Part shown: one piece after another, positions 27,346 to 64,000 of the stretch
How positions within the stretch are numbered: the first letter of the stretch is position 1
Layout: each line of letters starts with the position of its first letter
From: Octopus sinensis
Lineage: Eukaryota
NCBI RefSeq assembly: GCF_006345805.1
Contig: NC_043003.1
Location: forward strand, 96,472,001 to 96,536,000
DNA: 64,000 bases
Reading direction: 5' to 3'
Program-made: the position numbers and the translations under genes
The notes under the pieces: model-generated
What the model was told of the DNA's origin: nothing
What the model saw: only the letters and a program-made list of their open reading frames with translations
Database searches by the model: none

Positions 27346-27425
<80 letters not shown>

Positions 27426-43830: not shown

Positions 43831-44955
43831 TGCAGCCAAGAGAATACCTTCCATCAGGCATTAGCCATATTCTGAACGCCTTACTTTCCTGGGCATGGAC
43901 ACATTGAAACTCTGACGTCTGGCAGCTGACTTGGCAGACACCCATAAAATTAGGTTCCAAGTTCACAGATGAGGCTGGATCTAGGGATCTGTATCAGGGT
44001 TTCATTATGACAGTTATGTATTATATTAGAGGAAAAAGCAAAACCAAGACAGAATGAATATCTTAATTCATTTAGAATAATTTAATTAGGGTAAGGTGAA
44101 TTTGCAGTCATACAGCCGTTTCTGAGATAACTCAAGTAGTAGGTTAGCATGTCTATGCACTGGAGACATTAAACGAAGGACATATTTATACGGCACAGAA
44201 CGTTTTTTTTTTTACCTCAATAGACGTCATTGATTGGTTGAAATTGCAGAAATTGAAGAAAAACAACAAATATCTTACAAACTATAGGATTTTCTCAATA
44301 AAGCCAAGAGAAAAAGATGTTTTATAAACATATTCTACCAGTATACGAATTTAAAATTTTTTTAGTTACCTAGATACTATGTTAAAAACATAGATTTGCA
44401 TTATTTACATCAAATCAACTAGAGGTACAAGGAAAATTTGTAAAATATTCCCGGGATTCTCCATTTGAGGTTCCTAGGCTGAACGTAGGCACTCAGTCAT
44501 CTACACATAAAATACGCAAGCACGCACACATATACATATAAACAGCAACGAAGCATACACACTCTTGTGTATTAACATGATGCACACACCCTTTACAGCA
44601 GCGCAAGTTTATCACACCCGCACTCATGCGCGCAAAGACACATACACACATGCGTCGACATACCAACCAATTTAGATAATCACAATTCCGCAGAACTTTG
44701 TTAGAGACCGGATTGAATTCTGCAAAAGTAAAAACCAATAAAAAAAAAACATTTTTACTTTTTGTGTGAGGAAGTTTATAAATCGCAACAATTAGATAAT
44801 CGTCTAGGTTGTAATATTTTTCAAAGAAATATGTTATTCTAAACAGGAAAATCGTAAATAAATTTTCTTATACTTGAAAAAGTAAAGTTTGAAATATATA
44901 TATTTCGTTACCGACAGAGAATACGAAACTAAAGAATTATTATTGTTGTCAGAAG

Positions 44956-44980
44956 ATGAACATGGCGTGCACACAGCGTG
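44956..44980 (+). CDS. MRPL22: MRPL22 putative exon 1
   Basis: ATG AAC ATG GCG...CGT G|gtaggg; phase 1 fits exon 2. Confidence 0.6.
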
Positions 44981-47900
44981 GTAGGGTTTGTTGTTGATAA
45001 AAATTACCTTTATTTAGCTTTTCTAATTCCAGATTATGCAACATTTTAATTCGAATGCATGTAATATTCATTTCTTTGGGTGTATTGACAGTTATTCCTG
45101 TTTTACATTTCGTTAATGTTTTGCATTGTCTAAAACCCAGTGTGCGGACAGTAAATGTGAAATGAGAAATAGTGTAAATTCTGTCTTTTTCTTATTCCAC
45201 CACTTGCGCAAAATTAAAATGATGCTTCAAGTTTAAGACTCTTCCAGTATTTATCAAATATATTATTAAATAGATTGAAGGCAGCTAGCCGACAGGATAA
45301 TTACGGCATTGGAAGAAATGCCTTAAAATCTTAGTTCCGATTGTTTACATTGTATCTTACTAAGGTCAACTTCACCTTTCATTCTGTCGGGGTCGATGAA
45401 ATGAAAATACCCGCCATCGACTTACCACTTCCACTCAAAATTGTTATTTTGGGGCCTAAATCAGAAGCCATTCTTTAATTGGTTCGTTGTCTTCGATTCT
45501 ATAGTCTCCTTTGGTAGTCTGTCATTGTTCATCGGTTGGTAAATGTTTGCTATTACAGCCGTCTCCAAAGTCGTATCGGCGGACTTTCGATGTTGCTATA
45601 AACTACCTTATGGAGGATGAAAAGGACAAAAATTATTTTTGTCTCCCAAAATTTTAATTTATTTCCTCTCTTAAATTCTGTTGCACATTGTTGAATTTTT
45701 TTTTTTCATTATGTTAATCTCGATTAAACGCAAAACCCTCACAACACACACTCACACATTCTTTGTTTTGTCATGTACTGTCCATAATGTTTTTCTTAAT
45801 GTAATCCCTTTGTAGTCAATATATAAATCATTATTATTATTACAAGTTCCACCGAGGTCGACTTTACTCTCTCTCATCGTTTCCGAGTCGATAAAGTAAG
45901 TACCAGTTGAGTACTGGTGTCGACGTAATCGACTAGCTTCCTCCCCACCAAATTTCAGGCCTTGTACCTATAGTAGAAAGGATTATTATTATTATTACCC
46001 GACACGCTTGTTTCCCTTTCGTCATTCATTTTGGGTCACCGCCAGCACTCCATTTCCTAATCACATTTTTTTTCTACAGTCAACATCTTGCAACTTGTTC
46101 AGCAACCTCATCAATCTTATCAGTGTAGAAAGGTGTGTGAAGGTCAGGGGTACAAGGAAAAAGGACTGGGCCAAATCCTCCCTGTCTAACCCCATTAAAA
46201 AAAAGGTCCCTGGCTGGACCAACCTACAGTCATCTATCTTTTATTCTCAGACAAACTATATCCAGGACTAGATTCTAGCCTCCTTCCTTTTTAAAATTAT
46301 GGGGTAGAATTTGAAGGATATTTGGTTGCTTTTTCTAGCAGGCTGAATGACCATGTAGAGGCCCTTTCACTGACTTACCTTTAAACTTGCTTAAAGTTAT
46401 TATTTTCTGAAAGTTTCAATCAATTTAGTGGCTTTCTCTTGACATTTCCCACAAGATGAACAAATGTGGTTCACAAACAAGGTTATCATATTTCAAGCTG
46501 TGATACCAGTCTTGACTAGACCAAGTAAAACGTTTTTGACTATAGTCACTGTGCATTTATGGAATTTCAAGCCCATGCCTGTATTCTCAGCAAGATTTTT
46601 CCTTTCCTCAGCTGTTTCAAGGATATAGTCCATCATTTCATAAGAATATTTATGATTAGTAGAATCTAAATAAAAGCACTTAGATATTTCCACATTTAAT
46701 TGCCTGCTGTTAGGCCCAGTTTCCAACTGTACAGTGAGCTCAGTTGAGGATCAGTAGTTTATTGTGTTGTGTTCATAGCAAAGATAACTTTCAACAACTT
46801 AATACTGTTTGCTGTAAAGAATGTAGGTGCTACATTTCATGACGTTAACCCTTTAGCATTTAAACCAGCCTGCCATATCTGGCCAAATTACTCTTCTTGT
46901 TTTATGTTCATACTGGCCACATCCAGCTTCTCATACCTACCCTACATTGCCATTCTAAACATATATGGTCACATTATTGAAATTTTAAAGCTATGAGATG
47001 ATACATGGTTAATAGAAACAATATATATATATATGTATCAAATGAAATAAAATAAACAAACAGGACACAAAGGATGTCACGGTACACATGTTTCGAGCTT
47101 TATAAAACAACTTATTCTTACATCAATGTATAATCGACATATCTGTTATGTCGATTATACATTGATGTAAGAATAAGTTGTTTTATAAAGCTCGAAACAT
47201 GTGTACTGTGACATCCTTTGTGTCCTGTTTTTCATTTTATTTCATTTGATACATATATCCTCTCACCTCTGCTACTAGCTGGCATATACAGGTGCTTACA
47301 TTTATCAAGTATTCACCCTGAATTTATTATATATATATATATTACATTTGATAGAGCAATATGAATGCTAAAAGGTTCATTAGTAGGAGCACTGTGTTAT
47401 AGACAGGTGTTATTAGTTTGCAACATTGAGTTCGAATTCTCCTGTGAATATCTCTTGGAAAGAGATATATTTACTTTCTGCCAAACTGTCTTACTCTAAA
47501 TTTAACCCTTTAGCATTTAAACCAGCCTGCCATATCTGGCCAAGTTACTCTTCTTGTTTTATGTTCATACTGGCCACATCCAGCTTCTCACACCTACCCT
47601 ACATTGTCTTCAAGACAATATTTTCAATTGGTGACTCTATAATTATAGGGTTCATACTAATGGTACTGACTGTTAAGTGAAGAAATGTTATATAAAGTAA
47701 AAGAAAAGTTAATAAACTATTCTAATGAATATACTTTTTTTAAAAATTATTTTCATTTATCACTCAATTGTATTTGTGTTTTGGTGTTGATTTATAATAT
47801 CTCTGACTTAGGTTCTTTGTAATTTTTTCTTTTTACTTCTGTACATTTTTTCAGTGTTGTCTCGCTGTGGTCTTCGTACACTTTTTAGCAGGTAGGTATT

Positions 47901-49720
47901 TAATTTCTTCACATAGATATTTTCTTTTTGTCACTAAATATATGTAGTTATATTATCATTCACAATTCTATTATTACTGTTCTTTTAGGATACCTTTTTA
48001 CATTAGCATATTTACACAAGGGTATTTTTTTTTACATGCCATTGTAAACAATCATCATCATCATCATCATCATCGTTTAACGTCCGCTTTCCATGCTAGC
48101 ATGAGTTGGACGATTTTGACTGAGGACTGGCAAACCAGATGGCTGCACCAGGCTCCAAATCTCGATCTGGCAGAGATTCTACAGCTGGATGCCCTTCCTA
48201 ACACCAACCACTCCGAGAGTGTAGTCATTTAAAAAATTTTGTGCTTAACAGGGTCCAATGAACCATTCATTAGTTTACTTGAAGTTCTAATGGTGCACTC
48301 TGACTTTGGAAACTTGTCTGCCAAGATGGATCTGATGGTAGTTTCTGAAAATTTGTTCCCTATTTGACGGCTGAGTACAGAACATTCTTGTTCATTGTGT
48401 CTAACCTGGCAACAAGTATTGAGAGGCAGTGTACAAACAAGAATGTACTAGTCATTACAGAACAACATCGTTCATTATGCAGTGGTAGCATTGCTCTAAG
48501 TTCTAATAGAGTATAGATTGTATGCATTTCATAGAGCACTGTGGCTACTGCAATATGTATAACATTGCAGAAATGGTGGACTGTCATACTAAATGCCTTA
48601 AAGCATCTAGATTCAGCCCATTGTGTATCGAGATCAAATATAATCTAGGTCGATTTGTGTCTTTCATTCGACGGTAGCACATGAAAATAAATATCATTAA
48701 TGTAGAGTTAGTGATTCAATTGACTACACACTTTTCCTTTTAAAATATTAACTGTGTGTTTAGAAAAGACAGCTGTGAATGTTGTAGAGTAAACCCACTT
48801 TGAGCTACTTAAAGCCAATTGCATTTCACTAACTTTTGCTAAAGCCAATTGCATTTCACTCTTGAGAAAGACATCAGTATTAAACAATAGTCTTTTTGCT
48901 TAAACAAGAAATCAACATTATGCTATTAGTTGTAGAATCAGGTATCTGTGATGTGATTTTACAAATTTGTTCCATTTCTTAGTTCATCTGTTTACTCTCT
49001 TACTTTCTCTTATATTTCTAATATCTTTGAGAAACATATCAGTGCATGTTCCCAGTTTCTTGCTCTATGACTTTTATGTTAAAGGAAACTAATTTATTAG
49101 CTGTACAACCCATGGTGTTTAGAATATTTGGTTATCTGCAGAATTATTGGATTTGACAAAAATTGGGGAAATAAGTCAAAATATTTTCCACTGTTAAATA
49201 AAATTCAATGTACTATGTTGGATTTTCTTTTTATGGTATTATTGTTTGCAATTTCAGTCTCATCCAAGATTTACAAAGTCTGAATATTTTATCTTGTTTG
49301 ATGAAATTAAATTAGTCTTTCATTTTTCAGACTTAGTTTGGAAAAGCAAATCTGTGTGCCAACAGCAAATACTGCGTTGAAAATATTGCCTGTACAAACC
49401 CAGTCTTTACATACCACAACAGTAAACAATGGGATGAAGTGGGATAAATACAACACTATTGTTTATCCACCAACAAAACCTGGAGAGGAAGAACGGCCTG
49501 CTGTAAGTTAAATTTTAAATGAACTCAGTTTTATAGAAGTTCTAATTCAGATCTTGTGCATATTGTTATGATGTGGAATATTTTCCGTTTGCAATAAAAA
49601 TATTTATTATGATAGTAAGTCGTTTGCAAATGGTTTAAGATTCAAATGGATGATTTCCTGAAAAACTTTTGGCATTAACAGCTCTTGCCCCCTTCTCTCT
49701 CTTTATTTATGTAACCCCAT

Positions 49721-49783
<63 letters not shown>

Positions 49784-50240
49784 GTATATATATATATTAA
49801 TAATAACATAGGGTAAAATTAATTAATAATTTTACCAAGTAGTCAGTATGTTAAAAAAACCTTTTTAGGTAAATTATACAAATTATTCTATAATCATATG
49901 CATAATTATAATCAGGGGTCAGCTAAGTGCCTCGCCACATACTGAATTAGAAATAGACGCTAATGTCTTTTATAATTATATATATAATTATAGAATATTT
50001 TATATATATATATATATGTATGGGTGTATATACACATATATGTGTTTGTGTCTTCTCTTGACTTGGCAATATAGTTGTAAATGAGCCTCATACAATCTTT
50101 ATTTGCAATCTTCTGTGGAAACATGTCTGGCTATGGAGAAAAATGTTGGGGTTGGTAATAGGAAGGGTATCTTTTTGTTAAAAAAACCTGCCACACCGAA
50201 TTACCAGACTCACTGTGATAGTATGGAAAAATGATGAGAA

Positions 50241-50287
<47 letters not shown>

Positions 50288-53200
50288 TATATATATATAT
50301 ATGCCAAGATGAAATCTGTGAAGACAGTGCAAGTATCACAGCACACAGGAACCAACTGTGTTGCAAGAGGAACCAGGCTGAGAATCAAACTACATTTCCT
50401 GGAATTACAGCTGTTGCAAGTCCCAGTCTTATGCCAGAGTAACAGAACAACATCAGGTAAAGTTGTTCCAAGGTAACAAAGAATAAGAGTGCATCCCATT
50501 TGATAAGGATGTTGACTCCATCTTGGAAGCAACAGCCAAAGGTGATGTTGACTGTCACATCTAGACAATGACCATCATTATCATCGGTTTAGAAATGGAG
50601 AAGCTTGAGTTGGAGGAGAAAAATGCAGTGAAACAGAGCCAGTAAAATCCATTAGCTCAAGCTGGAGCTTCAGAAAAGACATTGGAGTCTGTCGTGTGTG
50701 TGTATGCCTTGTGTTTGTTCCCCATTACTTGACGCCTGGTGTCAGTTTGTTCACATCCCCATAATTTAGTGGTTTGGCGAAAAAGACCAAGAGAATGAGT
50801 ACCAAACTTAAGAAAAAAGAAAAGTAAGTGCTGGGGTTGATTAGTTCAACCCTTCAAAGTGGTGCTGCAGTACAATGACAGACAAGTAAAAGAATATAAC
50901 ATTCTCTGGTACAATATAGCCTAAGGCATTAAATTCTACTTATATTTTCTTTTATCTGTTTATGAAACTCTCAACATCATCCATGGAATATAAATGTGAG
51001 ATTTGCATTATAATGCCTATTGTAAGATATATTTTTTAAAATTAAAAATACTTCAATTTTGGTTTTATAGCAATTTATTTCTTTGGAATTATGAATCAAA
51101 AGCTAAATCAGTCAAAATTAAAACAGAAAGCTCATTTTCTATTTTGGCTATTAATTTATATTACTTGACTTCTTGTGTGGCTTTGAAGTATTTCTCTCTG
51201 CAGGAAATAACACATTCTCAAGAATGAGAAGTAAAAGAATAACATTCCCTGGTACAATATAACCTAAGAGATTAAATTTTACTTAAACTTTCTCTTATCT
51301 GTTTATGAAACTCACAACATCAATGGAATAAAATTGTGAGAATTGGATTATAATGCCTATCATAAGATATTTCTTATATTTCAATTTTAGTTTTATAGTA
51401 ATTTATTTCTTAGGAATTATGAATCAAAAACTAAATCAGTCGAAACAGAAAGTTAGCTCATTTTCTATTTTGGGTGTTAATCTATATTGCTTGCTTCTTG
51501 TGTAGCTTTAAAGTATTTATCTTTGCAGGAAATAACTCACTCTCGAGAAAATATTAAATACAGTCCATTAAAGATGTGGTACATTGCTTGTATGGTGAGT
51601 TATCTTATATTTGCTAAAACTTTCTGAATGTTTTATGTACATAATTATTTCCTTTCTATGAATTAAGACTTGTTTGTCAATTCAAAGAGGCCAGTTTAGC
51701 TTGGAGATAAAATAGTTATTTGTCCACTTTCATTGTCAGTTTTTGTTACACGTCAGTCTTCCAAACTGGCATGATGATTTAGATATATGTATATTATTGA
51801 ACTAATATTAGATGCTTGTATGGCTGTGTGGTTAACAAGTTTATTTCTTAAAACATGATTTTGGGTTCATTCCCACTGCACATCATAGAGTGACTTAGTG
51901 GTTAACCCTTTCGTTACTGTATTTATTTTGAGATGCTCTGTGTTTCTTTCAATTACTTTATATATAACAAAGAATTTAGTAAAATGAATTAGTTATCATT
52001 CAGCTAGTGTTAGGAACATAAATTGTGACTAAGGTTTGGTGGAAGATTTCAATTTAACACTTATGAAAACAAGACATTTGTACTCGGAGCCAGAGCCGGT
52101 TTCAGCCGGGTTGGTAACGAAAGGGTTAAGGTGTCAAACTCATGATTGTAAGATTGTGGTTTCGATTCCTCAATTGAGCGATGTGTTGTGTTCTTGAGAA
52201 AAAACACTTCATTTCATGTAGTTCCAGTCTACTTGGTTGGCAAAAATGAATAATCCTGTGATGGACTGGCATCCAGTCCAGGTGGGGAATATATATGCCA
52301 CAAAAACTGGGAGACCAGCCCTTTGAGCCTATATGACTTGATAAGGATCTTTCTCTTAATCCTATCCCACACGTGTCTTCTACTATAGCCTTAGGCTAAC
52401 CAAAGCTTTGTGTGTAGATTTGGTTGATGGAAACTGGAAACAGTCCCACATTTGTGTTTACTATCCTCTAACTGCTTTTTCTTTTACTCATGCACACATA
52501 GTGTGTTGGTTTGACCAATATTTGTATTGAAATAGCAAAAAGATATGACAAAGGATTATTTATTCTGGGCATATTTAATGCAGTGAGATTAAGAAGTTAA
52601 TTAGAAAGGCAATAATAGTCCTATTTATATTTCAGTAAGTCCACTCTGCTGAGTGGTTGGTGTTAGGAAGGGCATCCAGCTATAACACCCATACCAAAAC
52701 AGACACAGAAGTCTGGTGTAGTCTCCTGCCTGGTTAGCTCCTGTCAAACCGTCCAACTCATGCCAGCATGGAAGGCAGGCGTTAAATGATGATGAGTACA
52801 ATCACAATCATGCTTCACTGATGTCTTATAAGATATACTTCAAGAGTTATCTCCCATATTTTGCTATCCGCTCAGTTGAAGTCGACTCTTGGTTATTCGT
52901 TGGATCAGTGTCCTCCAGTCAGTTCTATCCTGGGCCGCTTCTTTCAGATTGGCTATGTCCATTCTGGTATCACTCTTGATGGTTTCAAGCCAGCAGGTTC
53001 TTGGTCGGCCTCTTCTTCTCTTGCCACTGACCAGTCCGAGCATGATGTCCTTCTCCAGGGATTTTCTCTGCATATTTTGCAGAACCATTAAGACTAGTGT
53101 AATTCATGGAGATTACAGGTAAAACTTTAAGATATATTGGAAGTTTATAGAGAACCACGGAGTACATGAAATGAAATAATATTTTATTTGAAACATTTGA

Positions 53201-56200
53201 TTTATTAGATAGAGTTAAAATTCATAAAAACATTATTAAATGTGAAATTTTAGGAGACATCTCTGAAAGCTATAGTCCTTATTTTATACCTGTCACCTTT
53301 TCTACTTTGAGAGTTGTGATCTATTATCTTTCATGTTATGTCAAGAAGTTAACAATCTTAAGTATAGAATGGAATTGAAGAAATAATCCAGGTATAATTA
53401 TTATTCTGCTGTTTTACAACTGTCATAATAAAGTGTTTAACAAATCATTACTAGCTGTATTCCATTCTTATTTTCATATTAAAGAAAAGGTCATGTAGCT
53501 AGACTTGAACCCACAGTCTCAGTGAACATGGCTGTGGATTCTGAAATATTATTACAAATGCAGCCATGCCTAAATTTATAATAATAAGGGGAAAAAATCC
53601 CTGTAACTCTTATCTGTTCCATGCCCACTTAAAAAAATTATGCAAATGATGTATACACATATATCATCATCATCATTATTTAGTGTCCGTTTTCCATGCT
53701 GGCATGGGTTAGACGGTTTTATTGGAACTGGTAAGCTAGAGAGCTGCCTCAGACTCCAGTCTGTTTTGGTATGGTTTCTACAGTTGGATGCCCTTCCTAA
53801 ACCACGCCACTGAGTGTAGTGGGTGCCTTTTACGTGTCACTGGCATTGGCCACAACTATGATTTCACTTTACATGTCTTCTCTAGGACAGCAAATCACCA
53901 GATGTCTTGGTCACTTGTCATTGCCTCCGTGAGACTCAACATCTGAAGATCATATTTCACAACCTTGTCCCATGTCTTTGTATATATTTGGAAAGTGTTG
54001 TATGAGTGCATTTTGCGATAGAATAAGAATTTCTATGTGAACAGAATAGTTTTTATTAAATCTTTGAATGATCTAATGTGAAATTTAATGTTGTGTGCTA
54101 GAATATTGCTCTTCTACACCACATTCCATTCCTGCTTTTTCATGTCCCATTCAGAAGACAAATTAAGGTATCTTGCCAATTACTGTTAGTTTTGTCCCTG
54201 CTACATTGTTTGATGGATTTGTTGTTGCTGTCATTATTGTTCTTGTTATTATTATGTTTTGGACAGGCAAAGGTTTAACATCTACAGAACTGAAATGAGT
54301 ATTTATAGATTAACTGAATGGATTGAACAAGGGTTAAACTTAATCTGAATTATTGCAAGATGAAAAACAAATACAAGGAGTTCTGGCCAAAAAAGCATTA
54401 GGAAGGTGTCTAATACAAGGAAGCTAAACATAATCAATTGTATCAAATGAAAGTAGGATACAATTAAAAAGATCTAAGTTTATAGTGTAACTTCCAATAC
54501 AAAGTTTTAAACAACCACAATGTTGAAACGTACATAGGAACAAATGATATAAATCTCTGTGTATCATAATTTCTCCTACATTTGCTGTGTTTATCATAAC
54601 TAGTAATACTAAGTGTAGTAGTTGCTCAATCATTATACTGGAAACAAACTGGACATTGATAATCTACATGGAGCTCTAAACTTAACTTAACAACAGCAAT
54701 CATATATCTATTTGTACACACAATATATATGTACTTTATTTGTGGGTTAACAAAGCTACTGATGGTTTTATGTAAGATTTTCACAATTGTTTAAGTGTGC
54801 TACATGAAAGTGTTGAGATGACTACTAACACTTACATGTGGCATGCTTGAACAATTGTGAAGGTCACTTTACATGAAACCAATGGTAGTCCTGTACACCC
54901 ACAAATATCTATCCTCCAATGTGGTATTGAGCACTCATTCTCACTGTTTGATATTAATGCGTGTGTATGTGTGTGTACACACCTATATATATATGAAACG
55001 GAAATAAAATATTGAAAATGATACACTAATGAAAATATACATTAAAAAATTTAGAAAGAAAGAGAAACTGATAAATTTAGAAAAATATGTATTGAGAATG
55101 TAAAAACATAGATAAAAATCAAAATAAAATTTAAAATTTAAAAGTTAACCCACAAATAAAGTGCATGTATATTGTGCATATATATCACGGACAAGTGAAT
55201 TATTTTAATACAGAGATGCATTAACATGGTCTAAGGTTGCGTATTTCTCACTATATGATTATTGCTGATGATTTATTCTATTTTACTTGTTAGATCCGAG
55301 GAATGTCCATCGATGAAGCCCTGAAGCAGTTGTCATTTTATAAGAGAAAAGGCTCTACTGTTGTGAAAGATGTAAGTTTCTATGCTCTCTCAGAATTGTC
55401 ACTCACATCTCTTTTCAGTGTGTGTCTTGGCAGTAATTATATGTTGAACATCTAATAAAAGACACATGCTGTCACTAATTCTTATGTAGCCAGTAGCTCT
55501 CTTTGTTCCTGCTTACCTGCTTAACCTCTTTACACAGGTATTATTCATATGTATCTAGATAAAATGTGGATAATAATTTCACTGTTTCCATGAACAATAG
55601 TCTCAAAGCCCTCTTTCAGTGGTGGTGGGGGCTAATGACCAAGTCTCTTTCACCCACACAAAGATATGATTAAAGAAACAGTCTTACATCACATTCTCTC
55701 TCGGCAAGCTACTGTTAAATCTCTCCAAGTTACTATTAATACCCGGCATTACAATACCTAGTTATATCTCAAGTCACCTTGCATATATTTATAGAGGATC
55801 TTCGTCGATGCCTCCACCAAATTTGGAAATGGTCTAACGAATGGGACCTGTGTCTGAATGTGTCAAAGTGCTGTCATCTGCCTGTTGGCTCTCCTCCTGC
55901 AACTCAACTTGATTTCATGCTGGGTCGTCTGCTGCTGGAGAGGACTGAGCAGGTAAAGGACCTGGGTATCTTGGTGGATTCCTCCTTTTCGCCTTCGGCC
56001 CAGTGCGTCCATGCTGCCAACAAAGCACGCGGAGTTCTGTTCTTGATTCGACGGTCATTCGGAATGCTCACAGCAGCCATATTCCTACCGCTCTGTGTCA
56101 CGCTGGTGAGACCCATATTGGAGTACGGGATTCAAGCCTCTTCTCCTTATCTCCTCAAAGACATACAGCATCTCGAAAGAGTCCAGAAGCTGGCTATCTG

Positions 56201-59200
56201 CATGGTTCTTGGTCTCAAGAATTTGTCGTATGAAGAAAGGCTGAAGACGCTCGACCTTTATTCTCTAGAAAAATGCCGCCGCCGTGGTGATCTCATTCTT
56301 GCTCACAACATCATAAGCGGAAAGTGTAACCTCTCGAAAGAGCAGTTCTTCACTCCTGCTCCGGAGCGTTGGCTGCGGGGTCATTCCGAAAAGCTCTATC
56401 TGCGACGATTTCATCTCAATCGAAGGAGAGGGGCTTTCTCTGTCCGGGTTGCGGATCCGTGGAATAAGCTACCGGACAAGATGGTGAAGATGCCGACGAC
56501 CGCTCGGTTCAAAAATCTCCCTTGACCATAAGTGGCCTGAACTCTTTACATGAACACCACCCTGTACATAACTCCATGTCCCCCTACATGGCCTTGCTTT
56601 TTGCTTTTTGAGCCAAAAAATTAACTAACTAACTAACTAACATATATATACCTTCTCAACTTAGGACTGAGTTCCATTCCAACTGACAGATTGTAAGTCG
56701 ATTTGGTCGTATGTTGGATTCATATTTTTCAACACTATTTTCATTCAAAAAGGTTATAAAAATATAAAACACAAAAATTTAACCTATAGTTATTGTACAC
56801 TATGTGAAAAATACTCTTCATCTGAAAGTTCTTTTGCCTCACAATCTAGCAATTCGTCTAGATCTATTTCACATTCTAATTCTAGATTGTTTGCAAGTTT
56901 AACTATGTCTTCTCTAATAGTATTCACCTTCTTTCTGCCTTCATACTGCCGGATAATCTTCATTTTACAGTCTAAACTGATAGCCTTCCTTGATTTCTTA
57001 GCTGGTGCATCTGCAGATGAAAGCATTTTCCTTTTACCAGTCATTTTAGAGGTATTTCAGATACAATTGTAACTAATTCACATGCAACTGATGTTTGAAA
57101 GTAACTGAGTGGGTCTGAGGGAGGCCTGCGTTGCCAGATGCTGCCATAGGTATCATGCACACAGCTGTCCAATGTTCAAAAATCGATTTTTTTATTTATT
57201 TATTTTTTGTGGTTGTAAGTGCGGATGGTCGTCAGTCGTGGAGAAGGTGTAGTATACAGTTCTGCTGAAAATGCATCCTGAAGTCTAGGCTTCCCCTTCT
57301 ACTCTAGAAAATACATAAGCTGAATTAGTAACTGACTTGACAAAGGTGAAGCATGACTTAAAATTAGTGTATAGTGCTGCTGTTACACATGCAAGCTAGT
57401 GTTTCTAAATTGGGCATGGGTTACTTCAGAATAAAGTGTAACATCATCATCATCATTATTATCGTTTAATGTCTACTTTCCATGCTGGCATGGATTGGAC
57501 GGTTTGACTGAGGACTGGTGAGCCAGAGGCTGCACCAGCCTCAATCTGGTCTGGCAAAAAATTTTATTCTCTGCTGATGTTAAGAGTGATCTGCAACTTA
57601 AAATTTTTAGCACAACTGTTATGGAAACCTCAAGCAAAAGATACTCTTATGCAAAAGGCTACAAGCTACAAGTGATTGAATATGCCAAACAGCATGTCAA
57701 CAGGGTTGCAGAAAGGCATTTTGGAGCACCACGGATTGAGAAAATGATCTGCTACTGGAAGAAACAAAAGGACCTGTTGAAGCCTGCATCAAGACTTAAA
57801 TGTAACCTGCATCAGAGCGCAGCTAAGTGGCCAGAACAGGAGCAAGAGATGAATGAGTGGATAGTTACAGAGAGAAATTTGGGTCGTGCAGTATCAATAA
57901 AAATGATTATTAATGAACCAAAAGTGAGTGCAGCCCGAGGTCTGGATGATGGCACATCAAGCTGGTGTTAGATTTATGAAGAGGCACGGACCGGCAATGC
58001 AAATGAAAACAAGAATAGAACAAAAAATGCCTCAAGATTATGATAACAAAATGATTGAATTTCACTGGTTCATAATCAGTGCAAGAAAAGAGATTGACTA
58101 CGAACTGGGTCAGATCTGAAACATGGATGAAGTATCACTAACATTTGATGTGGTATCAAATAGAACAAGTGGATGCTAAAGGGTCCAAAACCGTAAGTGT
58201 AAAGACATCTGGACATGAGAAAACCCATTATATTGTAGTACTACCATGTTGTGCTGATGGAACAGAACTGCCACCACTGCTTATTTTCAAGAGGAAAACT
58301 TTACCAAAAGATACAATTCCACATGGAATTTTTGTTTATGTCCACCCAAAGGGGTAGATGGATGAAGAGGGTGTGAAGCTAGATAAGGTCTGGTCAAGGT
58401 GTTCTGGTGATCTTAAAATACCATCCCTTGTGTGGGATCAGTTTTGTGCCCACAAAACAATTGAAAATGAGAATGACAGTGATCCCTGCTGGTTTAACAA
58501 GCCAATTATTAGGTCGTCAAGTATGAAATTTGTAGAAAAGGGAAAAAGTTTGCCAATGTTTTATAAATACAAGGAATAGTTTTATTCATCAAAGTAGGCA
58601 CTCATATTGTCAATACACTTTTGCCATTTCATCAGTAGCTTGTCCAGCCAGGAACTGTAAAAGCCTGGCAATCTAGAGTCAATAAAATCTTGGAAGGCCT
58701 GTTTTACAGCATTGTCGTAATTGAATTTTTTTCCTATCAAAAAGTTATCCAAATTCTGGAAGAAGTGGTAGTCAGTGGGGGCAAGATCCGGTGAGTATGG
58801 TGGATGATGGAAAACTTCCAACTCCAATTCCTGTAGCTTCACCAATGTCATTTTTGCAATGTGTGGTCTGGCGTTGTCTTGCAATTAAATAGGAGTGGAT
58901 CTGCTGACTAATCTAGGCTGTTTTTTTGTAAGTTTCTGCATCATTTGGTCCAGTTTGCTGCAGTATACTTTGGCCGTGATTAATGAGCCAGGTTTAATGA
59001 AATCATAATGGATCACACCTGCGCCAGACCACCAAACACACACTGTCAGCTTCTTTTGATGAACCTTGCTTTTTGTGACTGTGTTTTGGTGGCTCATCTT
59101 TGTCCGACCATTGTGCTGAATGTTTATGGTTGTTGTATTAGATCTATTTCTCATCACATGTTACACTTCGATTCAAAAATGATTTATTTTTGTGACGAGA

Positions 59201-60851
59201 AAGTAGCATAATGCAGGCTTCCAAACGTTGCTGTTTCTGATTCTCATTGAGTTCATGTGGAACCCACTTATCCAACTTTTTCACTTTACCGATTTGAACT
59301 AGGTGAGTCAATATTGTTTGCTTGCTAACACCAAACAACAACGATAATTCACGGGCACTTTGAGATGGATTTGACACGACAGTGGCTTTCAGTTTGTCAT
59401 TATCCACCTTTGATTCTGGTCGACTGCATTGCTCATTTGTGAAGTCAAAGTTACCAGAATGAAATTTTGCAAACCAATTTGATACTGTCTGCTATGTATG
59501 TAATAACATTAGAATTAAATATTCCATTAGCATTCCGAGGTGTCTGTGATGCTGTATTTCCAAGAAAGAACTCATATTTCAAAACTATGAATTTTCGATT
59601 CATTGCAATTGATCAATGAAATGACAGTATATTATGTTCAGAGATACTGAAAAAAATTAATTTTTAGACTGAACCCTTCAATAGTTGTTTGATGCTGGTA
59701 GAAAAATATGCTTTCCATCATACGTATTTAAACCAAACAGTCAAATTTGGAAAGTTTCTTGGTTGTTGGGAGGTACATCCCACATCTGAATCCATCCTTG
59801 TCATAGTGTAGTTTCAGTATTACAGTGGGTACATAACGGTAGTCGTAAACTTTGAGAGTAAACTTACCATACCATGGCTCTGTACTGATGGTCCCACAAA
59901 ACAAATTGGTAAGGTAGGTGAGTGCTGCCTTTCGGTAGTTTTACAGATTGCAAGTGTGGGGGTCACAACAGGAGACAGTCACAGTTAGCCAACATAAGGT
60001 ATAGCGCAAATAGGTGCTAGACGAACAGCCAGAATAAATGCTAGGAACATTTTAAGTGGTGTGCTGGAGGTTACAGTGATTTTTTTTTCATTATATCTGT
60101 AAGAGTAACAAGACTTGATATGCCAGGACCTTATTTTTATGTTTATTATTTATTTTTTCAAATTTTTGGTTGTCAAAATTAGGGTGCATCCTCAAGGATG
60201 AAGCGTCTTCGATGCCAGGAAATGCACTAATCTATAAATCTTCATCTCATTTCTGCAGATGGTTAACCGTTTCCTGTCCAAAGCATTTTCATAAGTTTGC
60301 CCTAAACATCCATGAATGTTTCCATGCTTTTAGTAGCCCTTGTTTCATACATTCTGAATAATAAAAAGCTTTCCTTTCATAACTCCCAAGCTACTCTGGT
60401 GGTTGAAAAAAATTGGTTATGTGTGGCATAACTGATGCATGAACGTTAGGGAGATATGTCCTGCATATCACATTTTATACACAGGACATGCAAAGGATTA
60501 ACTAGCCCTTAAATACCTATTAGTATATATTTGCTTCTTTTAACATTTTATGTATGAGTTTCTTTTCTGGAGATGGTTCTGGAAGTTTGATAACTATATA
60601 ACCTTTGTAGATAGCCATGAAAATAAGTCCACTGAAAAAAGAAATAGGGAAGAGCTCTGTAGGACATTATTCAGTGACATTAATTATGTTTCAAATGCTT
60701 CAGCTATCCAGTTATAAAAGTCTTGTTTAAAAATGGATGTTATGGTATTTATTTTCATTTATTTTTTTTTATTCTCTGCAGGTTCTTTTAGAAGCTCAGG
60801 AAATGGCCATCCTTGAGCATGGAGTTGAATTCAAATCTAATTTATGGATAG
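44956..60851 (+). CDS. MRPL22: Mitochondrial ribosomal protein uL22m, 3'-partial. join(44956..44980,47855..47891,49331..49502,51529..51594,55294..55371,60782..>60851)
   Basis: A continuous frame gives an Arg/Ser/Leu-rich presequence, then KWDKYNTIVYPPTKPGEEERPA EITHSRENIKYSPLKMWYIACM IRGMSIDEALKQL...VLLEAQEMA...EFKSNLWI, colinear with MRPL22 orthologues. Exon 1 is the least certain; the alternative ATG is at 44962. Confidence 0.93.
46845..47378. mobile_element. piggyBac-like (TTAA-CCCT) MITE hosting a hairpin insertion
   Basis: Left end ttaaccctttagcatt; degenerate right end aatgctaaaaggttca; interrupted at a (TA)n tract. Confidence 0.65.
47029..47258. repeat. Long near-perfect inverted repeat (arms about 112 bp, 5-nt loop)
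   Basis: Arms 47029-47141 and 47147-47258, loop tctgt; only about 3 differences. Confidence 0.95.
47855..47891 (+). CDS. MRPL22: MRPL22 exon 2
   Basis: tttttcag acceptor, gtaggt donor; (V)LSRCGLRTLFS(R); phase 2 fits exon 3. Confidence 0.75.
48054..48225 (-). mobile_element. RTE 3' UTR-type retroposon copy
   Basis: (CAT)n cgtttaacgtccgctttccatgctagc terminus. Confidence 0.85.
49331..49502 (+). CDS. MRPL22: MRPL22 exon 3
   Basis: ...MKWDKYNTIVYPPTKPGEEERPA; gtaagt donor. Confidence 0.93.
50300..50640 (+). mobile_element. Hero-type non-LTR retrotransposon N-terminal fragment
   Basis: FDKDVDSILEATAKGDVD..TMTIIIIG...LEEK resembles the pre-RT region of Hero-group elements. Confidence 0.55.
50884..51549 (+). 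repeat. Tandem duplication (about 345 and 320 bp) of the MRPL22 intron 3 end plus the first codons of exon 4
   Basis: Copy 1 at 50884-51227, copy 2 at 51229-51549; both end ...tgcag GAAATAAC(A/T)CA(T/C)TCTC. Confidence 0.92.
51529..51594 (+). CDS. MRPL22: MRPL22 exon 4
   Basis: EITHSRENIKYSPLKMWYIACM; gtgagt donor. Confidence 0.93.
51811..52450 (+). mobile_element. SINE A (51811-51880 and about 52370-52450) containing SINE E (about 51885-52345)
   Basis: Both SINE sequences resume colinearly after the nested insertions. Confidence 0.7.
51906..52125. mobile_element. piggyBac-type MITE (220 bp)
   Basis: TTAA duplicated at 51902-51905 and 52126-52129; TIR CCCTTTCGTTAC / GTAACGAAAGGG. Confidence 0.92.
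52645..52797 (+). mobile_element. RTE 3' UTR-type retroposon copy
   Basis: gtgttaggaagggcatccagc...gttaaatgatgatg. Confidence 0.8.
52860..53090 (-). mobile_element. RTE-BovB-like LINE 3' end (same family as 40740-41098)
   Basis: MQRKSLEKDIMLGLVSGKRRRGRPRTCWLETIKSDT...SRLQLSG*. Confidence 0.85.
53664..53975 (-). mobile_element. RTE 3' fragment
   Basis: Shared terminus and UTR. Confidence 0.75.
55294..55371 (+). CDS. MRPL22: MRPL22 exon 5
   Basis: IRGMSIDEALKQLSFYKRKGSTVVKD; gtaagt donor. Confidence 0.95.
55789..56640 (+). mobile_element. Young 5'-truncated CR1-type LINE with an open ORF2 C-terminus and (AACT)n tail
   Basis: Uninterrupted frame to 56525 (KDLGILVD, LVRPILEY, LERVQKLA, RRRGDLI, RGHSEKL, AFSVRV..WNKLP). 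Probable 7-bp TSD catatat at 55782-55788 and 56641-56647. Confidence 0.92.
56649..57249 (-). mobile_element. Tigger/pogo internal-deletion derivative
   Basis: ORF 56790-57044 fuses the HTH-psq start (KKSRKAISLDCKMKII) to the acidic tail (LELECEIDLDELL...ELSDEE); degenerate TIRs (accttctc / gagaaggtg) flanked by TA. Confidence 0.7.
57600..58560 (+). mobile_element. Decayed pogo (POGK-like) transposase
   Basis: Brinker-type DBD YKLQVIEYAK, AAKWPEQEQ, NMDEVSLTFD, TSGHEKTHY.VVLPCCADG..LPPLLIFKRK; several frameshifts. Confidence 0.85.
58580..59460 (-). mobile_element. Decayed mariner (DD34D, Hsmar1/cecropia-like) transposase
   Basis: WVPHEL, VTCDEK, QDNARPH, YSPDLAPTDY motifs; stops and a frameshift; TIRs not seen. 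Confidence 0.9.
60782..60851 (+). CDS. MRPL22: MRPL22 exon 6
   Basis: VLLEAQEMAILEHGVEFKSNLWI; gtgaga donor; later exons lie outside the window. Confidence 0.95.
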
Positions 60852-61289
60852 GTGAGAGCGATTGTTTATCAACAATGATTTTTTTCTTCTTTACATCAGT
60901 TTCTGCCCAAACAGTGTTTGAATAAAATAACTAAAGTCTGTGCTTATTCTAGAAACAACCTATCTAGTATTTATGTCTTGGGTTGGAGTGTTAATCATTT
61001 TTTAAGATGATTTGAATCCAACGATAATATTGTTTTAATTTGTTTGTCTTCAGGAAACATAAACAGATTCAGTTGGGTCAATATACTGTACTTTTGTATA
61101 TATTAAATGTCTAAAAAAAACCCAAAAAACAACAACAAATTACTAGTAGGCATTCATTTAATTTTAGCATGAGACTTTATAAATGATATAATGAATTTAT
61201 TGATCTCTTTTTACCTTTTATCATTATGCCTGCTTCCGTTTATATTTTAGGTACATCAACATCAAAATAAATATCAAATGGAAATTGTA

Positions 61290-61620
61290 GTTGTGATACC
61301 TGTGCTGGTGGCATGTAAAAAGCACCATCCGAACGTGGCCGATGCCAGCGCCGCCTTGACTGGCTTCTGTGTCGGTGGCACGTAAAAACCACCAGTTGAT
61401 CATGGCCGCTGCCAGCCTCCCCTGGCATCTGTGTCGGTGACACATAAAAAGCACCCACTATACTCACGGAGTGGTTGGCGTTAAGGAGGGCATCCAGCTG
61501 TAGAAACACTGGCAGATCAGACTGGAGCCTGGTGCAGCCTCCTGGCTTCCCAGACCCCAGTCAAACCATCCAACCCGTGCTAGCATGGAAAACGGATGTT
61601 AAATGATGATGATAATGATC
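61290..61620 (+). mobile_element. RTE 3' UTR-type retroposon copy
   Basis: Internal tandem units plus gttaaatgatgatg tail. Confidence 0.85.
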
Positions 61621-62865
61621 AGTGACAGCAAAATAGATAATTATATATTTAGGTTATTAAATAAAAATGGTGTTTATTTGGTTTTATAAAATTTATTATC
61701 AGGCTATTATAACTGAACTTTCACTTGTAGTTTGAATTAAAAATTCAACTTGTAAAAGTGATATTTGTTATTCAGATTATTGATAGCACCTGATACATGA
61801 TACTTATTTATCAGGTAACTTATTGCAATCAAGAAATAATAAGTTAATTAATTGTAAGATAATTCTGTTGCATGTTCTGGAAATTCAGACATCCTAGATA
61901 AATAAGTGTAGCTAAACTTTAAGAAGTACAAGTGAGATTTTTTAAGAAGGTGATTAAGGGCTAGACATGATGCATAAAGATGAAGGCAGTTTTCTGGGAT
62001 GCTGTATTAGAGACTAGGTTTTGAGCCCTCACCACCACTACTAAAAGAATGCACAGTAATGTTTTGAGTTAATTTGTTCCTGGAGACCACTCATATGGTG
62101 GAAACTCATAAAGCAGAGCAATAATTTCCCATGGTAGCAATGTTATAAATTGTAATTCATTTCCAGAATAATATCTTTCCTATAAAATTTATAATACTTG
62201 TAAATGAATGGCAATAAAACAACAGTAGAATGGAATGAGTATTTTATGTAAAGTAAAAAGAATGTCAAGATCACTCATAATTAAAAATATTATTATAATC
62301 GTTTTCTGAATCACTTTCACTCGCACTAGACTTGCACACACCATCACTTGTAGACGCATTTACTGATTCATGAGCACTTGTAGACAAGTTTAGTGTTGTT
62401 TGCTTAGAAGTTTTTTTTCGCTCTCTATAAATTTGTTGGTAACATACAGAAACATTTGTTATGGTACTAGAAACTTTTTCATGTCATTCAAAATTTGGAT
62501 CTTGCGCTTGAAAAACAGAACTCATAAACCCAGTGTCTCGTAAAGCAGGTCCTTGTAAAGTGCTGTATTACTATATGCACATGGCTGCTATTGGAGTGAA
62601 TGCAATTAGTTAGCTTGGGTCAACAAACTTGGTCAGTCCTGAATTAATAATCTTGAAGAACAAAAGAGCATCACTTATTAAAACAACTGCTTCAAAATGC
62701 TTGCATGAGCATTATAAAATACAAACAACCCATGCTGTGAAAAGTTTGGTGATAAGGAATACCATTCAGCAACACAGCTATAAGCACCATGACAAGCAGG
62801 AAGAAATGAGTAGAGATATAGTGCTGACTCTTTAGTTTTGTTGGCAACAATTTCTCTAGTGTTTA

Positions 62866-63252
62866 TCTTCTCTCTATATATAAACGGCAGTTTGTCTGTG
62901 TGTGTTTCTGTGTGTCTGTTTGGTTGTACCCTCACTCTGACCACGGCTTTCAACCGATTCTGATGAAACTTGACACACACATAGCCCAATGTCATAATTC
63001 AAAACTAACGCAGCGAAAATTTTGAAAAGTTCCCCCAGTTCTGAAAAAAATCGATAAATTCGACATGGGGTCGAGAATTAGAAACACAAACCACAGACTG
63101 TCATGGGGACGCAACTCCACCTTTTTAACTCTCAAAAAAAATTTACCATCATTTTTTTCCCATTTTTTTGCTATATTTTGGCTATAACTATCTAAAAATG
63201 CTTTATAGTTATTTCCCTTACAAACCCGAGCAACGCCGGGCGATACTGCTAG
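62866..63252 (+). mobile_element. Non-autonomous Helitron (387 bp)
   Basis: A|TC...CTAG|T; near-identical to 34064-34450. Confidence 0.88.
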
Positions 63253-63844
63253 TGCCATAATAAAATGCACTTTGTCTGAGTTTTTACTCTTTAACATTCA
63301 AATTACTCTGTAGAATGTATTGCTTATTTATTCTCATTGTTTGTGAATTAATCATGCAGTCTCATAGCTTCAAGATTTTGGTAACGTGGTTGTTTATTTA
63401 TTTAGAATAATAGACATTATAGAGTGGATGTGAGAGGCTGGATATAGCTGGTTTAGTCATAAAACAGGTAGAATATTTGGTCTGGACATGACCCGTAAAA
63501 TGGTCTGTGATAGAAAGTGTCTCCAGATGGTAAAAATTATGACCAAAATAACCTGGTAAACAACAAATTTGGCCTGGTTTTCAAGTTACTGTGTCAGATG
63601 ATGAAGGTCTGTAACATGTGGCAAGGTACACAGGGACAAATGCCAGCATGGGAAAACAGTTGGCATGATGATGACATTGACTACAATGATAATGTTGGTA
63701 GTTATTGTTGTTCTCCTCCAAGTTTACAACTCAGGTGGCATCCTGCAATTCTATATAAGAAACAATAGTCAAAATTATATGTTAGCTGGAAATAGTTGTT
63801 GTGTTTCTTTCCAGAGACAATTATATCAGTTATTACCTTACAGG

Positions 63845-63960
63845 GTATTGGTTGGCCTGGGGCTCTAGTAGAAGACACTTGCCCCAAGATGTCATGCAGT
63901 GGGACTGAACCTTATACTATGTGGTTGCAAAGAAAGTTTCTTAGTCACAGAGCCATGCCT
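63845..63960 (-). mobile_element. SINE A 5' half
   Basis: gaagacacttgccccaag...gggactgaacc...ttagtcacagagcc. Confidence 0.7.
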
Positions 63961-64000
63961 GTTCTTACATAGGTAATAATAATAATGATTTCAAATTTTG

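What the first reader, a model, noticed from the sequence alone, without database searches (positions are those of the whole stretch)
50884..51594. Duplicated 3' splice site creates a poison acceptor upstream of MRPL22 exon 4
Seen: the last about 300 nt of intron 3 plus the first seven codons of exon 4 are tandemly duplicated. The upstream copy keeps an acceptor with a cleaner pyrimidine tract (tttctctctgcag|GAA, 51204) than the real one (tttatctttgcag|GAA, 51529). It reads in frame EITHSQE and then TGA (51225-51227). The copies have diverged by roughly 15-20% by eye, so this is not a simple assembly duplication, yet the decoy AG and frame are retained. Established: using it would add 325 nt with a premature stop far upstream of later junctions, which is a standard NMD trigger, or give an 85-aa product lacking the L22 domain. 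Inference: either a splicing-coupled NMD dial on a mitoribosomal protein, or a site that must be actively silenced.
Basis: partly seen in the sequence, partly recalled or inferred. Interest (0 to 1): 0.7.

Follow-up and report, generated by a model that had tools for sequence, protein, structure and literature searches.

The report
Duplicated splice acceptor relic in octopus MRPL22
A roughly 330-base stretch spanning the end of intron 3 and the start of exon 4 of the octopus MRPL22 gene is duplicated in tandem, leaving a spare, intact-looking splice acceptor inside the intron; it looks like an old, neutrally drifting leftover, not a built-in regulatory switch.

Summary
Window 50884-51224 (copy A) and 51229-51549 (copy B) are head-to-tail copies of the last ~300 nt of intron 3 plus the first 21 nt of exon 4 of Octopus sinensis MRPL22. 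They differ by 12-14% substitutions and five indels. The upstream copy keeps an acceptor that is locally at least as good as the real one.

The regulatory reading is not supported.
- The in-frame TGA lies in the 4-nt duplication junction. A stop that soon is what AT-rich intron gives by chance.
- The decoy's exon-derived 21 nt carry 3 substitutions (one R->Q), the same rate as the surrounding intron.
- AG retention is expected by chance (P about 0.8).
- O. vulgaris has both copies. O. bimaculoides and Argonauta hians have one acceptor.
- The O. bimaculoides copy is a mosaic (A-like 5' half, B-like 3' half; 1 of 20,000 permutations). A-B divergence is about twice the intronic divergence between the species. 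So the duplication predates the split and was probably collapsed by unequal recombination in O. bimaculoides, whose MRPL22 is still annotated as a full-length 219-aa protein.
- No annotated isoform or database protein uses the decoy.

Actual usage needs RNA data, which these tools do not hold. Ordinary, modest interest.

The parts
49331..49502 (+). MRPL22 exon 3 (coding, ...KWDKYNTIVYPPTKPGEEERPA), donor CCTGCT|GTAAGT at 49503
   Evidence: tblastn of P0001, sequence and splice signals
50694..50872 (+). SINE-like dispersed repeat ending about 12 nt before copy A; not part of the duplicated unit
   Evidence: three diverged copies elsewhere in the window and others in L001; present at the orthologous place in O. 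bimaculoides
50884..51224 (+). Copy A of the tandem duplication (upstream, now wholly intronic): about 320 nt of intron-3 sequence plus 21 nt derived from the start of exon 4
   Evidence: alignments A1 and A2, BLAST
51190..51203 (+). Decoy polypyrimidine tract and AG (atttctctctgcag); candidate branch points TTAAT (A at -50) and, in O. sinensis only, TTGAC (A at 51168, -36)
51204..51224 (+). Exon-derived 21 nt of the decoy (GAAATAACACATTCTCAAGAA = EITHSQE); 3 substitutions relative to the real exon start (T syn, H syn, R->Q)
51225..51228 (+). Duplication junction TGAG; holds the in-frame TGA (51225-51227); identical in O. vulgaris
51231..51236 (+). Weak donor-like GTAAAA (GAA|GTAAAA, 5 of 9 consensus positions) at the start of copy B; with the decoy acceptor it would bound a 27-nt stop-containing mini-exon
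   Evidence: below the 6-of-9 cut that only the real donor passes
51229..51549 (+). Copy B of the duplication (downstream): last 300 nt of intron 3 plus the first 21 nt of the real exon 4
51529..51594 (+). Real MRPL22 exon 4 (EITHSRENIKYSPLKMWYIACM), acceptor atttatctttgcag|GAA, donator ATG|GTGAGT at 51595

Best explanation
This is a relic of a single ~330-bp tandem duplication that straddled the intron 3 / exon 4 boundary of MRPL22 in an ancestor of the Octopus species compared here. The downstream copy (B) stayed attached to the rest of exon 4 and its strong donor, and is the working acceptor. The upstream copy (A) was left inside intron 3 as a pseudo-acceptor followed by 21 nt of former exon and then by intron. 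Since then it has drifted at about the neutral rate.

Shown:
- The structure, the junction and the lack of any other copy.
- Both copies are present in O. sinensis and O. vulgaris. O. bimaculoides and Argonauta have a single acceptor.
- The O. bimaculoides copy is a mosaic, A-like in its 5' part and B-like in its 3' part.
- A-B divergence is about twice the interspecies intronic divergence.

Inferred:
- The duplication is roughly 1.5-2.5 times as old as the sinensis/bimaculoides split. That split is put at about 34 Mya in PMC10700109.
- It was collapsed back to one hybrid copy in the O. bimaculoides lineage by unequal recombination or slippage between the copies.
- The decoy is mostly ignored because of exon definition. 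The real acceptor is paired across a 66-nt exon with a GTGAGT donor. The decoy has no consensus-like donor for 391 nt and lacks the other 45 nt of exon 4.
- Any occasional use would give a stop-containing transcript that is probably removed by NMD. That is splicing noise, not regulation.
For: Structure and junction. Only two copies in the window. Both copies with the same junction in an independent O. vulgaris assembly. One copy in O. bimaculoides and one acceptor in Argonauta.

Mosaic: in the 5' part there are 3 A-specific and 9 B-specific substitutions; in the 3' part, 23 A-specific and 1 B-specific. Fisher p = 2e-5, and 1 of 20,000 permutations reaches the observed break. All five indels follow the same pattern.

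Distances: 5' part A-bim 0.087 against B-bim 0.132; 3' part B-bim 0.037 against A-bim 0.158. A-B is 0.123-0.142, against an intronic sinensis-bimaculoides divergence of 0.050-0.078.

Neutral drift of the decoy: 3 of 21 substitutions in the exon-derived part against 0.14 in the adjoining intron. Chance retention of the AG is 0.74-0.83, and chance of 0-1 change in the 19-nt core is 0.06-0.48. The stop is at the junction, and the median open run in intron 3 is 13 codons.

Only the real donor passes a 6-of-9 consensus match downstream of the decoy. All annotated isoforms read EITHSRENIKY (EINHSRENIKY in O. bimaculoides) through the real acceptor. The truncated products are absent from the protein collection. 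There is no RNA family, no meaningful ORF on either strand, and no special RNA structure.
Against: By local criteria the decoy is at least as good as the real acceptor. It has 9/10 against 8/10 pyrimidines, one against two upstream AGs, and the same TTAAT branch-point candidate. O. sinensis also has an extra TTGAC at -36. So silence is an inference from context and was not shown.

The 19-nt PPT-AG core of the decoy has 0 (O. vulgaris) or 1 (O. sinensis) change against O. bimaculoides, where about 2.3 are expected. That is a weak hint of conservation (P about 0.1-0.3).

The single copy in O. bimaculoides rests on one assembly built largely from short reads. A collapse of two homogenised copies by the assembler cannot be fully excluded.

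No transcript data could be examined. NMD-sensitive isoforms are easily missed by annotation.
Confidence: 0.75

Rival explanations
1. Regulated unproductive splicing. The decoy acceptor is used in a controlled fraction of transcripts, with the real donor (391-nt exon) or with the weak GAA|GTAAAA donor (27-nt stop-containing mini-exon). This would tune MRPL22 output through NMD in the O. sinensis/O. vulgaris lineage.
For: The decoy acceptor is intact and locally as strong as or stronger than the real one in both species. It is transcribed first. Use would put a stop 367 nt upstream of the next junction. The PPT-AG core shows slightly fewer changes than expected. A human BRCA1 tandem duplication of intron 9 plus part of exon 10 does yield a transcript retaining the duplicated intron piece, with a premature stop (PMC11839443).
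Against: There is no conservation signal. The element is missing in O. bimaculoides and Argonauta. The copy evolves at the neutral rate, and the stop is a junction by-product. No annotated isoform or database protein uses it. The mini-exon donor matches only 5 of 9 consensus positions. There is no known regulator or feedback logic for a mitoribosomal protein acting in nuclear splicing (own knowledge).
Confidence: 0.1
2. Recent, lineage-specific duplication. The duplication arose after the split from O. bimaculoides, in the sinensis/vulgaris stem, and the single copy in O. bimaculoides is the ancestral state. The inner halves of the duplicate (3' half of A, 5' half of B) then diverged unusually fast.
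For: It needs one event instead of two. A and B share an 11-nt stretch that O. bimaculoides lacks, which could be a shared derived insertion. Argonauta also has a single acceptor.
Against: A-B divergence (0.123-0.142) is about twice the total sinensis-bimaculoides intronic divergence (0.050-0.078). That is impossible under a clock if the duplication is younger than the split. The rate asymmetry would have to run in opposite directions in the two halves: 3 against 9, then 23 against 1 (1 of 20,000 permutations). All five indels follow the same mosaic. No mechanism is known that speeds up only the inner halves to this degree.
Confidence: 0.1
3. Decoy element that promotes retention or detention of intron 3. 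The pseudo-acceptor binds U2AF/U2 non-productively and slows removal of intron 3, as proposed for 'decoy exons' in human erythroblast retained introns (own knowledge, Parra et al. 2018; not retrieved or checked here).
For: It is an intact acceptor with a candidate branch point, no good partner donor, and a position inside a 2-kb intron.
Against: There are no transcript data. The element is not conserved in O. bimaculoides and shows neutral divergence. Nothing distinguishes it from any other pseudo-acceptor.
Confidence: 0.04

Closest known systems
Human F7 intron 7 minisatellite whose first 37-bp unit spans the exon 7 / intron 7 boundary (Borensztajn et al. 2006, PMC1557585)
   Same: A tandem repeat straddles an exon/intron boundary, so the authentic splice site has identical or near-identical pseudo-sites inside the intron. 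[quoted passage not shown]
   Different: F7 duplicates the 5' splice site in many short units, and the exon-proximal (upstream) site wins. Here a single 330-nt duplication copies the 3' splice site with its branch-point region. The site next to the remaining exon is the downstream one, and the copies are old and 13% diverged.
Pathogenic tandem duplication of BRCA1 intron 9 (395 bp) plus the first 1617 bp of exon 10 (PMC11839443)
   Same: A tandem duplication spans an intron/exon boundary and duplicates the acceptor. The transcript containing the duplicated intron piece has a premature stop.
   Different: In BRCA1 a very large exon part is duplicated, so the upstream acceptor keeps full exon context and is used. 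In the octopus only 21 nt of exon follow the upstream acceptor. The allele is fixed in two species, which implies it is tolerated.
Intron creation by tandem duplication of an AGGT-containing segment (Rogers' model; Hellsten et al. 2011, PMC3265369; Drosophila cases, PMC2891723)
   Same: A short intragenic tandem duplication supplies ready-made splice signals, and the redundant copy is removed with the intron, leaving the protein unchanged.
   Different: There the duplication lies within coding sequence and creates a new intron. Here it lies across an existing boundary and merely lengthens intron 3 by about 345 nt.
Poison exons / unproductive splicing coupled to NMD (SR protein genes; C. elegans ribosomal protein genes, Mitrovich and Anderson 2000; own knowledge, not retrieved here)
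   Same: An alternative splice choice would insert a premature stop upstream of later junctions.
   Different: Established poison exons are used measurably, respond to the protein they regulate and are often highly conserved. None of this is shown here, and conservation was tested and not found.

Membership tests
Tandem duplication across an intron/exon boundary leaving an intronic pseudo-acceptor | Two head-to-tail copies with a single junction, each containing the polypyrimidine tract, the AG and the exon start | tested here: met
   A 50884-51224, junction 51225-51228, B 51229-51549; 89% column identity
Tandem duplication across an intron/exon boundary leaving an intronic pseudo-acceptor | Local duplication, not copies of a dispersed repeat, and not an assembly artefact | tested here: met
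   Only these two copies in 64 kb. The same two copies and junction are in the independent O. vulgaris assembly
Tandem duplication across an intron/exon boundary leaving an intronic pseudo-acceptor | Upstream copy evolves as non-functional sequence | tested here: met
   Exon-derived part 3/21 changed including R->Q, and intronic part 0.14. The core PPT-AG is slightly under-changed, but P is about 0.1-0.3
Poison exon / regulated unproductive splicing (AS-NMD) | Use would introduce a premature stop upstream of a later exon junction | tested here: met
   TGA at exon position 22-24, 367 nt before the next junction
Poison exon / regulated unproductive splicing (AS-NMD) | The alternative junction is seen in transcripts and rises when NMD is blocked | not testable with these tools
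   No octopus transcript contigs could be reached. Annotated isoforms all use the real acceptor, and the truncated products are not in the protein collection
Poison exon / regulated unproductive splicing (AS-NMD) | Conservation of the element across related species above the neutral level | tested here: not met
   Absent in O. bimaculoides and Argonauta hians; neutral divergence
Tandem (NAGNAG-type) alternative acceptors | Two AGs a few nucleotides apart sharing one polypyrimidine tract and branch point | tested here: not met
   The acceptors are 325 nt apart, each with its own tract and candidate branch point
Recursive splice site / RS exon | Acceptor AG immediately followed by a 5' splice site consensus (AG|GTRAGT), or regenerating one after the first splicing step | tested here: not met
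   The decoy reads CAG|GAAATA, and the exon 3 end plus the decoy start gives GCT|GAAATA
Tandem exon duplication giving mutually exclusive exons | Whole exon with both splice sites duplicated and reading frame preserved | tested here: not met
   Only 21 of 66 exon nucleotides are duplicated, with no donor copy and a stop at the junction
Decoy exon promoting intron retention | Cryptic exon with both splice sites inside a retained intron, bound by splicing factors, and its deletion relieves retention | not testable with these tools
   The acceptor is intact but the only nearby donor-like site is weak (5 of 9). There are no retention data

The most novel reading that the evidence does not exclude
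In the O. sinensis/O. vulgaris lineage, the old pseudo-acceptor has been recruited as a lineage-specific unproductive-splicing or intron-detention switch that sets the output of an essential mitoribosomal protein gene. O. bimaculoides, which collapsed the duplication, would be a natural knockout. The slightly under-changed PPT-AG core and the O. sinensis-specific gain of a consensus branch-point motif at -36 would then be early signs of selection for use.
Probability: 0.07. Interest if true: 0.6.

Novelty: new member of a known kind. Interest (0 to 1): 0.2.

Why it matters
As it stands this is a small, well-resolved piece of gene-structure natural history. It shows that a complete and locally stronger 3' splice site can sit 325 nt upstream of the real one in an essential gene for tens of millions of years, apparently tolerated. 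It also shows that such duplications can be undone by unequal recombination, leaving a recognisable hybrid copy.

It gives a natural three-species contrast (two copies, two copies, one hybrid copy) for testing how exon definition picks between equivalent acceptors in cephalopods, whose splicing rules have been little studied.

For genome annotation it is a warning. Splice predictors that score sites locally will prefer the wrong acceptor here. If the decoy turned out to be used and regulated, it would be an example of a poison splice site born in one step by duplication.

Tried and rejected
- Tandem Repeats Finder did not report the duplication. The copies differ by indels and the array has only two units, so the repeat finder, MAFFT and BLAST were used instead.
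- I looked for transcript evidence through the protein collection. The MRPL22 cluster holds only six NCBI or annotation-derived proteins and no transcriptome-assembly members. The O. sinensis protein itself is not on record in the contig index. Exact look-ups of the 85-, 83- and 30-aa decoy products found nothing. This is weak negative evidence only.
- Further octopod species were considered. The homology search returned only O. sinensis, O. vulgaris, O. bimaculoides and Argonauta hians among octopods. No genomic ORF fragments covering exon 3 or 4 from other octopus read sets appeared, so a second costly search was judged pointless.
- The Argonauta intron is occupied by an unrelated repeat and aligns only within about 25 nt of exon 4, so it cannot polarise intronic changes.
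- RNA structure: both acceptor regions fold no better than shuffles (z = 0.4 and 0.7). Rfam found no family in 44000-64000. ORFs on both strands are only short chance ORFs.
- Recursive splicing, NAGNAG acceptors and mutually exclusive exon duplication were rejected on sequence (see membership tests).
- MaxEnt-type splice scores were not computed. No such model is installed and there are too few octopus splice sites at hand to train one, so direct comparison of the two paralogous sites was used instead.
Full report
**What is there.** The window region is part of the Octopus sinensis gene for the mitochondrial ribosomal protein uL22m (MRPL22). A 128-aa conceptual translation of the exons found by tblastn matches XP_029639055.1, O. 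sinensis MRPL22 isoform X1, at 100%. In the window the coding exons are:
- about 44956, with an alternative first exon at about 45036
- 47855-47891
- 49331-49502
- 51529-51594
- 55294-55371
- 60782-60851

The rest of the gene lies beyond the window. It has acceptor atttatctttgcag|GAA and donor ATG|GTGAGT. Exon 3 ends at 49502 with CCTGCT|GTAAGT.

Copy A (50884-51224, 341 nt) and copy B (51229-51549, 321 nt) are head-to-tail copies separated by four bases, TGAG.
- Copy B is the last 300 nt of intron 3 plus the first 21 nt of exon 4.
- The copies are 89% identical over aligned columns, with 12.3-14.2% substitutions. Counting five indels of 2, 3, 12, 2 and 1 nt gives 81-83%.
- The unit has no other copy in the window. 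It is a local duplication, not a transposon family. A SINE-like repeat ends about 12 nt upstream of it but is not part of it.
- The decoy acceptor at 51204, the reading EITHSQE, the TGA at 51225-51227, the 325-nt offset and the 85-aa product are all correct.

**The decoy is locally as good as the real site.**

| Feature | Decoy (51204) | Real (51529) |
|---|---|---|
| Pyrimidines at -14..-5 | 9 of 10 | 8 of 10 |
| AG dinucleotides between the TTAAT candidate and the acceptor AG | 1 (-17) | 2 (-25, -17) |
| TTAAT branch-point candidate | A at -50 | A at -49 |
| Extra motif | TTGAC at -36, O. sinensis only | TTTAT at -10 |

Comparison with O. bimaculoides shows why the decoy tract looks cleaner. 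The real acceptor of O. sinensis and O. vulgaris took a C-to-A change at -10. The decoy kept the older ATTTCTCTTTGCAG in O. vulgaris and changed one T to C in O. sinensis.

**Where the stop comes from.** The TGA sits in the 4-nt junction between the copies, and the junction is identical in O. vulgaris. So the stop was made by the duplication event itself. It is not a feature kept by selection. In this intron (70% A+T) a stop is expected every 12 codons on average, and the empirical median is 13. Any reading from an exon fragment into intron would terminate quickly.

**Related species.** Through the protein cluster of MRPL22 I fetched three orthologous loci: O. bimaculoides (L001), O. vulgaris (L002) and Argonauta hians (L003).
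- O. vulgaris, an independent long-read assembly, has both copies and the same junction. This rules out an assembly artefact.
- O. bimaculoides has one copy between the same flanks.
- Argonauta has one acceptor. Its intron is otherwise unalignable.

**Age of the duplication.** The simple reading would be a recent duplication in the sinensis/vulgaris stem. Two results speak against it.
- The two copies differ by 12.3-14.2% substitutions. Long intronic alignments between O. sinensis and O. bimaculoides differ by only 5.0-7.8%, and between O. sinensis and O. vulgaris by 1.0-2.6%. Paralogues younger than the species split cannot be more diverged than the species under anything like a clock.
- The single O. 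bimaculoides copy is a mosaic:

| Part of the unit | A-specific substitutions | B-specific substitutions | Distance to O. bimaculoides |
|---|---|---|---|
| 5' part | 3 | 9 | A 0.087, B 0.132 |
| 3' part | 23 | 1 | B 0.037, A 0.158 |

The break lies between alignment columns 143 and 162. Fisher p is 2e-5, and 1 of 20,000 label permutations reaches the observed statistic. All five indels follow the same pattern.

A hybrid of the 5' part of A with the 3' part of B is exactly what unequal crossing-over or slippage between two tandem copies leaves behind. I therefore conclude that the duplication predates the sinensis/bimaculoides split by a factor of roughly 1.5-2.5 and was collapsed in the O. 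bimaculoides lineage. That split is put at about 34 Mya, with Octopus/Amphioctopus at 44 Mya (PMC10700109). The caveat is that the single copy rests on one largely short-read assembly.

**Is the decoy under selection?** I find no significant sign of it.
- The exon-derived 21 nt of copy A carry three changes: ACT to ACA, CAC to CAT, and CGA to CAA, which gives R to Q. That is 14%, the same as the adjoining intronic part (0.14). The real exon start has none in O. sinensis.
- At 9-14% per-site divergence, an intact AG is expected with probability 0.74-0.83. Keeping a frame over 21 nt is trivial.
- The 19-nt tract-plus-AG core has 0 changes in O. vulgaris and 1 in O. sinensis, against about 2.3 expected. 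This is at most a weak hint (P about 0.06-0.48 depending on the rate and on which species is counted).
- O. bimaculoides lost the element and its MRPL22 is still annotated as a full-length 219-aa protein.

**Is the decoy used?** This cannot be measured with the tools at hand.
- All annotated products read through the real junction as ...RPAEITHSRENIKY (EINHSRENIKY in O. bimaculoides). This covers O. sinensis X1 and X2 and the two O. vulgaris products; of the two O. bimaculoides isoforms, only X1 spans this junction.
- The 85-, 83- and 30-aa truncated products are not in the 15-billion-protein collection.
- No octopus transcript contigs are indexed.
- Downstream of the decoy AG, the only donor matching at least 6 of 9 consensus positions is the real one, 391 nt away. 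The GAA|GTAAAA at 51231 would bound a 27-nt stop-containing mini-exon but matches 5 of 9.
- Local RNA structure does not distinguish the sites.
- There is no Rfam family and there are no meaningful ORFs on either strand.

**Most likely mechanism.** From established knowledge of exon definition (Berget and colleagues; Reed and Maniatis 1986 on duplicated splice sites; own knowledge, not retrieved here), an acceptor flanked by long introns is chosen through pairing with a donor across a short exon.
- The real acceptor has a GTGAGT donor 66 nt downstream and the full exon sequence.
- The decoy has 21 nt of exon and no partner donor.

This is enough to explain preferential use of the downstream site without a dedicated silencer. 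Occasional use of the decoy would place a stop 367 nt upstream of the next junction, and such transcripts are probably degraded. That NMD in molluscs follows the vertebrate junction rule is an assumption.

**Comparison with known cases.**
- The closest described situation is the human F7 intron 7 minisatellite. It spans an exon/intron boundary, and its duplicated 5' pseudo-sites are functional in principle but silent (PMC1557585).
- A human BRCA1 tandem duplication of intron 9 plus 1.6 kb of exon 10 shows the opposite outcome when the upstream acceptor keeps a large exon context (PMC11839443).
- Duplication-born splice signals are also the basis of intron gain by tandem duplication (PMC3265369).
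- The element fails the tested defining features of a conserved poison exon, NAGNAG acceptors, a recursive splice site and a duplicated mutually exclusive exon.

**Verdict.** This is a real and neatly resolved structural feature. It is a new instance of a known kind, most likely a neutral relic. The regulatory reading is not excluded but has no positive support. Interest is low to modest. The most useful follow-ups are junction-read counts and the state of the intron in more octopods.

Noticed in passing
window 50694-50872; also 27176-27353 (-), 5588-5728 (-), 19694-19809 (-); L001 23830-24002 and 9061-9195: A SINE-like dispersed repeat of about 180 nt ends about 12 nt before copy A. It has diverged copies (68-72% identity) elsewhere in the window and in the O. 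bimaculoides locus, and it is present at the orthologous place in O. bimaculoides, so it is older than the species split. No Rfam family matched in 44000-64000.
   Followed up: partly
window 51165-51169 (A at 51168): An O. sinensis-only G-to-A change creates TTGAC, a consensus YTNAY branch-point motif 36 nt upstream of the decoy AG. O. vulgaris has TTGGC at this place, and copy B lacks the motif.
   Followed up: partly
window 51502-51528; L001 15478-15503: The real acceptor region differs between species. O. sinensis and O. vulgaris carry an 11-nt stretch with two extra AG dinucleotides (-25, -17) and a C-to-A change at -10. O. bimaculoides lacks the 11 nt and has no AG for about 60 nt upstream. 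The last ~190 nt of the intron are less diverged between species (0.037) than flanking intron (0.05-0.08), possibly through mild constraint.
   Followed up: partly
window 44956 and 45036: Two alternative first coding exons of MRPL22 (MNMACTQ..., isoform X1; MQHFNSNA..., isoform X2) lie about 80 nt apart. They give different N-termini to the presumed mitochondrial targeting region.
   Followed up: no
window 49735-49797, 49971-50021, 50243-50302: There are long (TA)n/(AT)n microsatellites inside intron 3. The O. sinensis/O. vulgaris alignment breaks at the 50243-50302 tract, suggesting length variation.
   Followed up: no
window 40707-40961 (+): An open stretch reading ...LWCWRRLLRIPWTARLTSGEGLKQI...GKRRRGRPRTR looks like the tail of a retrotransposon ORF. 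It was not tested against any library.
   Followed up: no
L001, L002, L003 (whole loci): MRPL22 gene length varies about twofold among octopods: about 12.8 kb in Argonauta hians, 15.3 kb in O. bimaculoides and 25.9 kb in O. vulgaris. A PITH-domain gene is the upstream neighbour in all three. The Argonauta intron 3 end is occupied by a different, highly repeated element.
   Followed up: no
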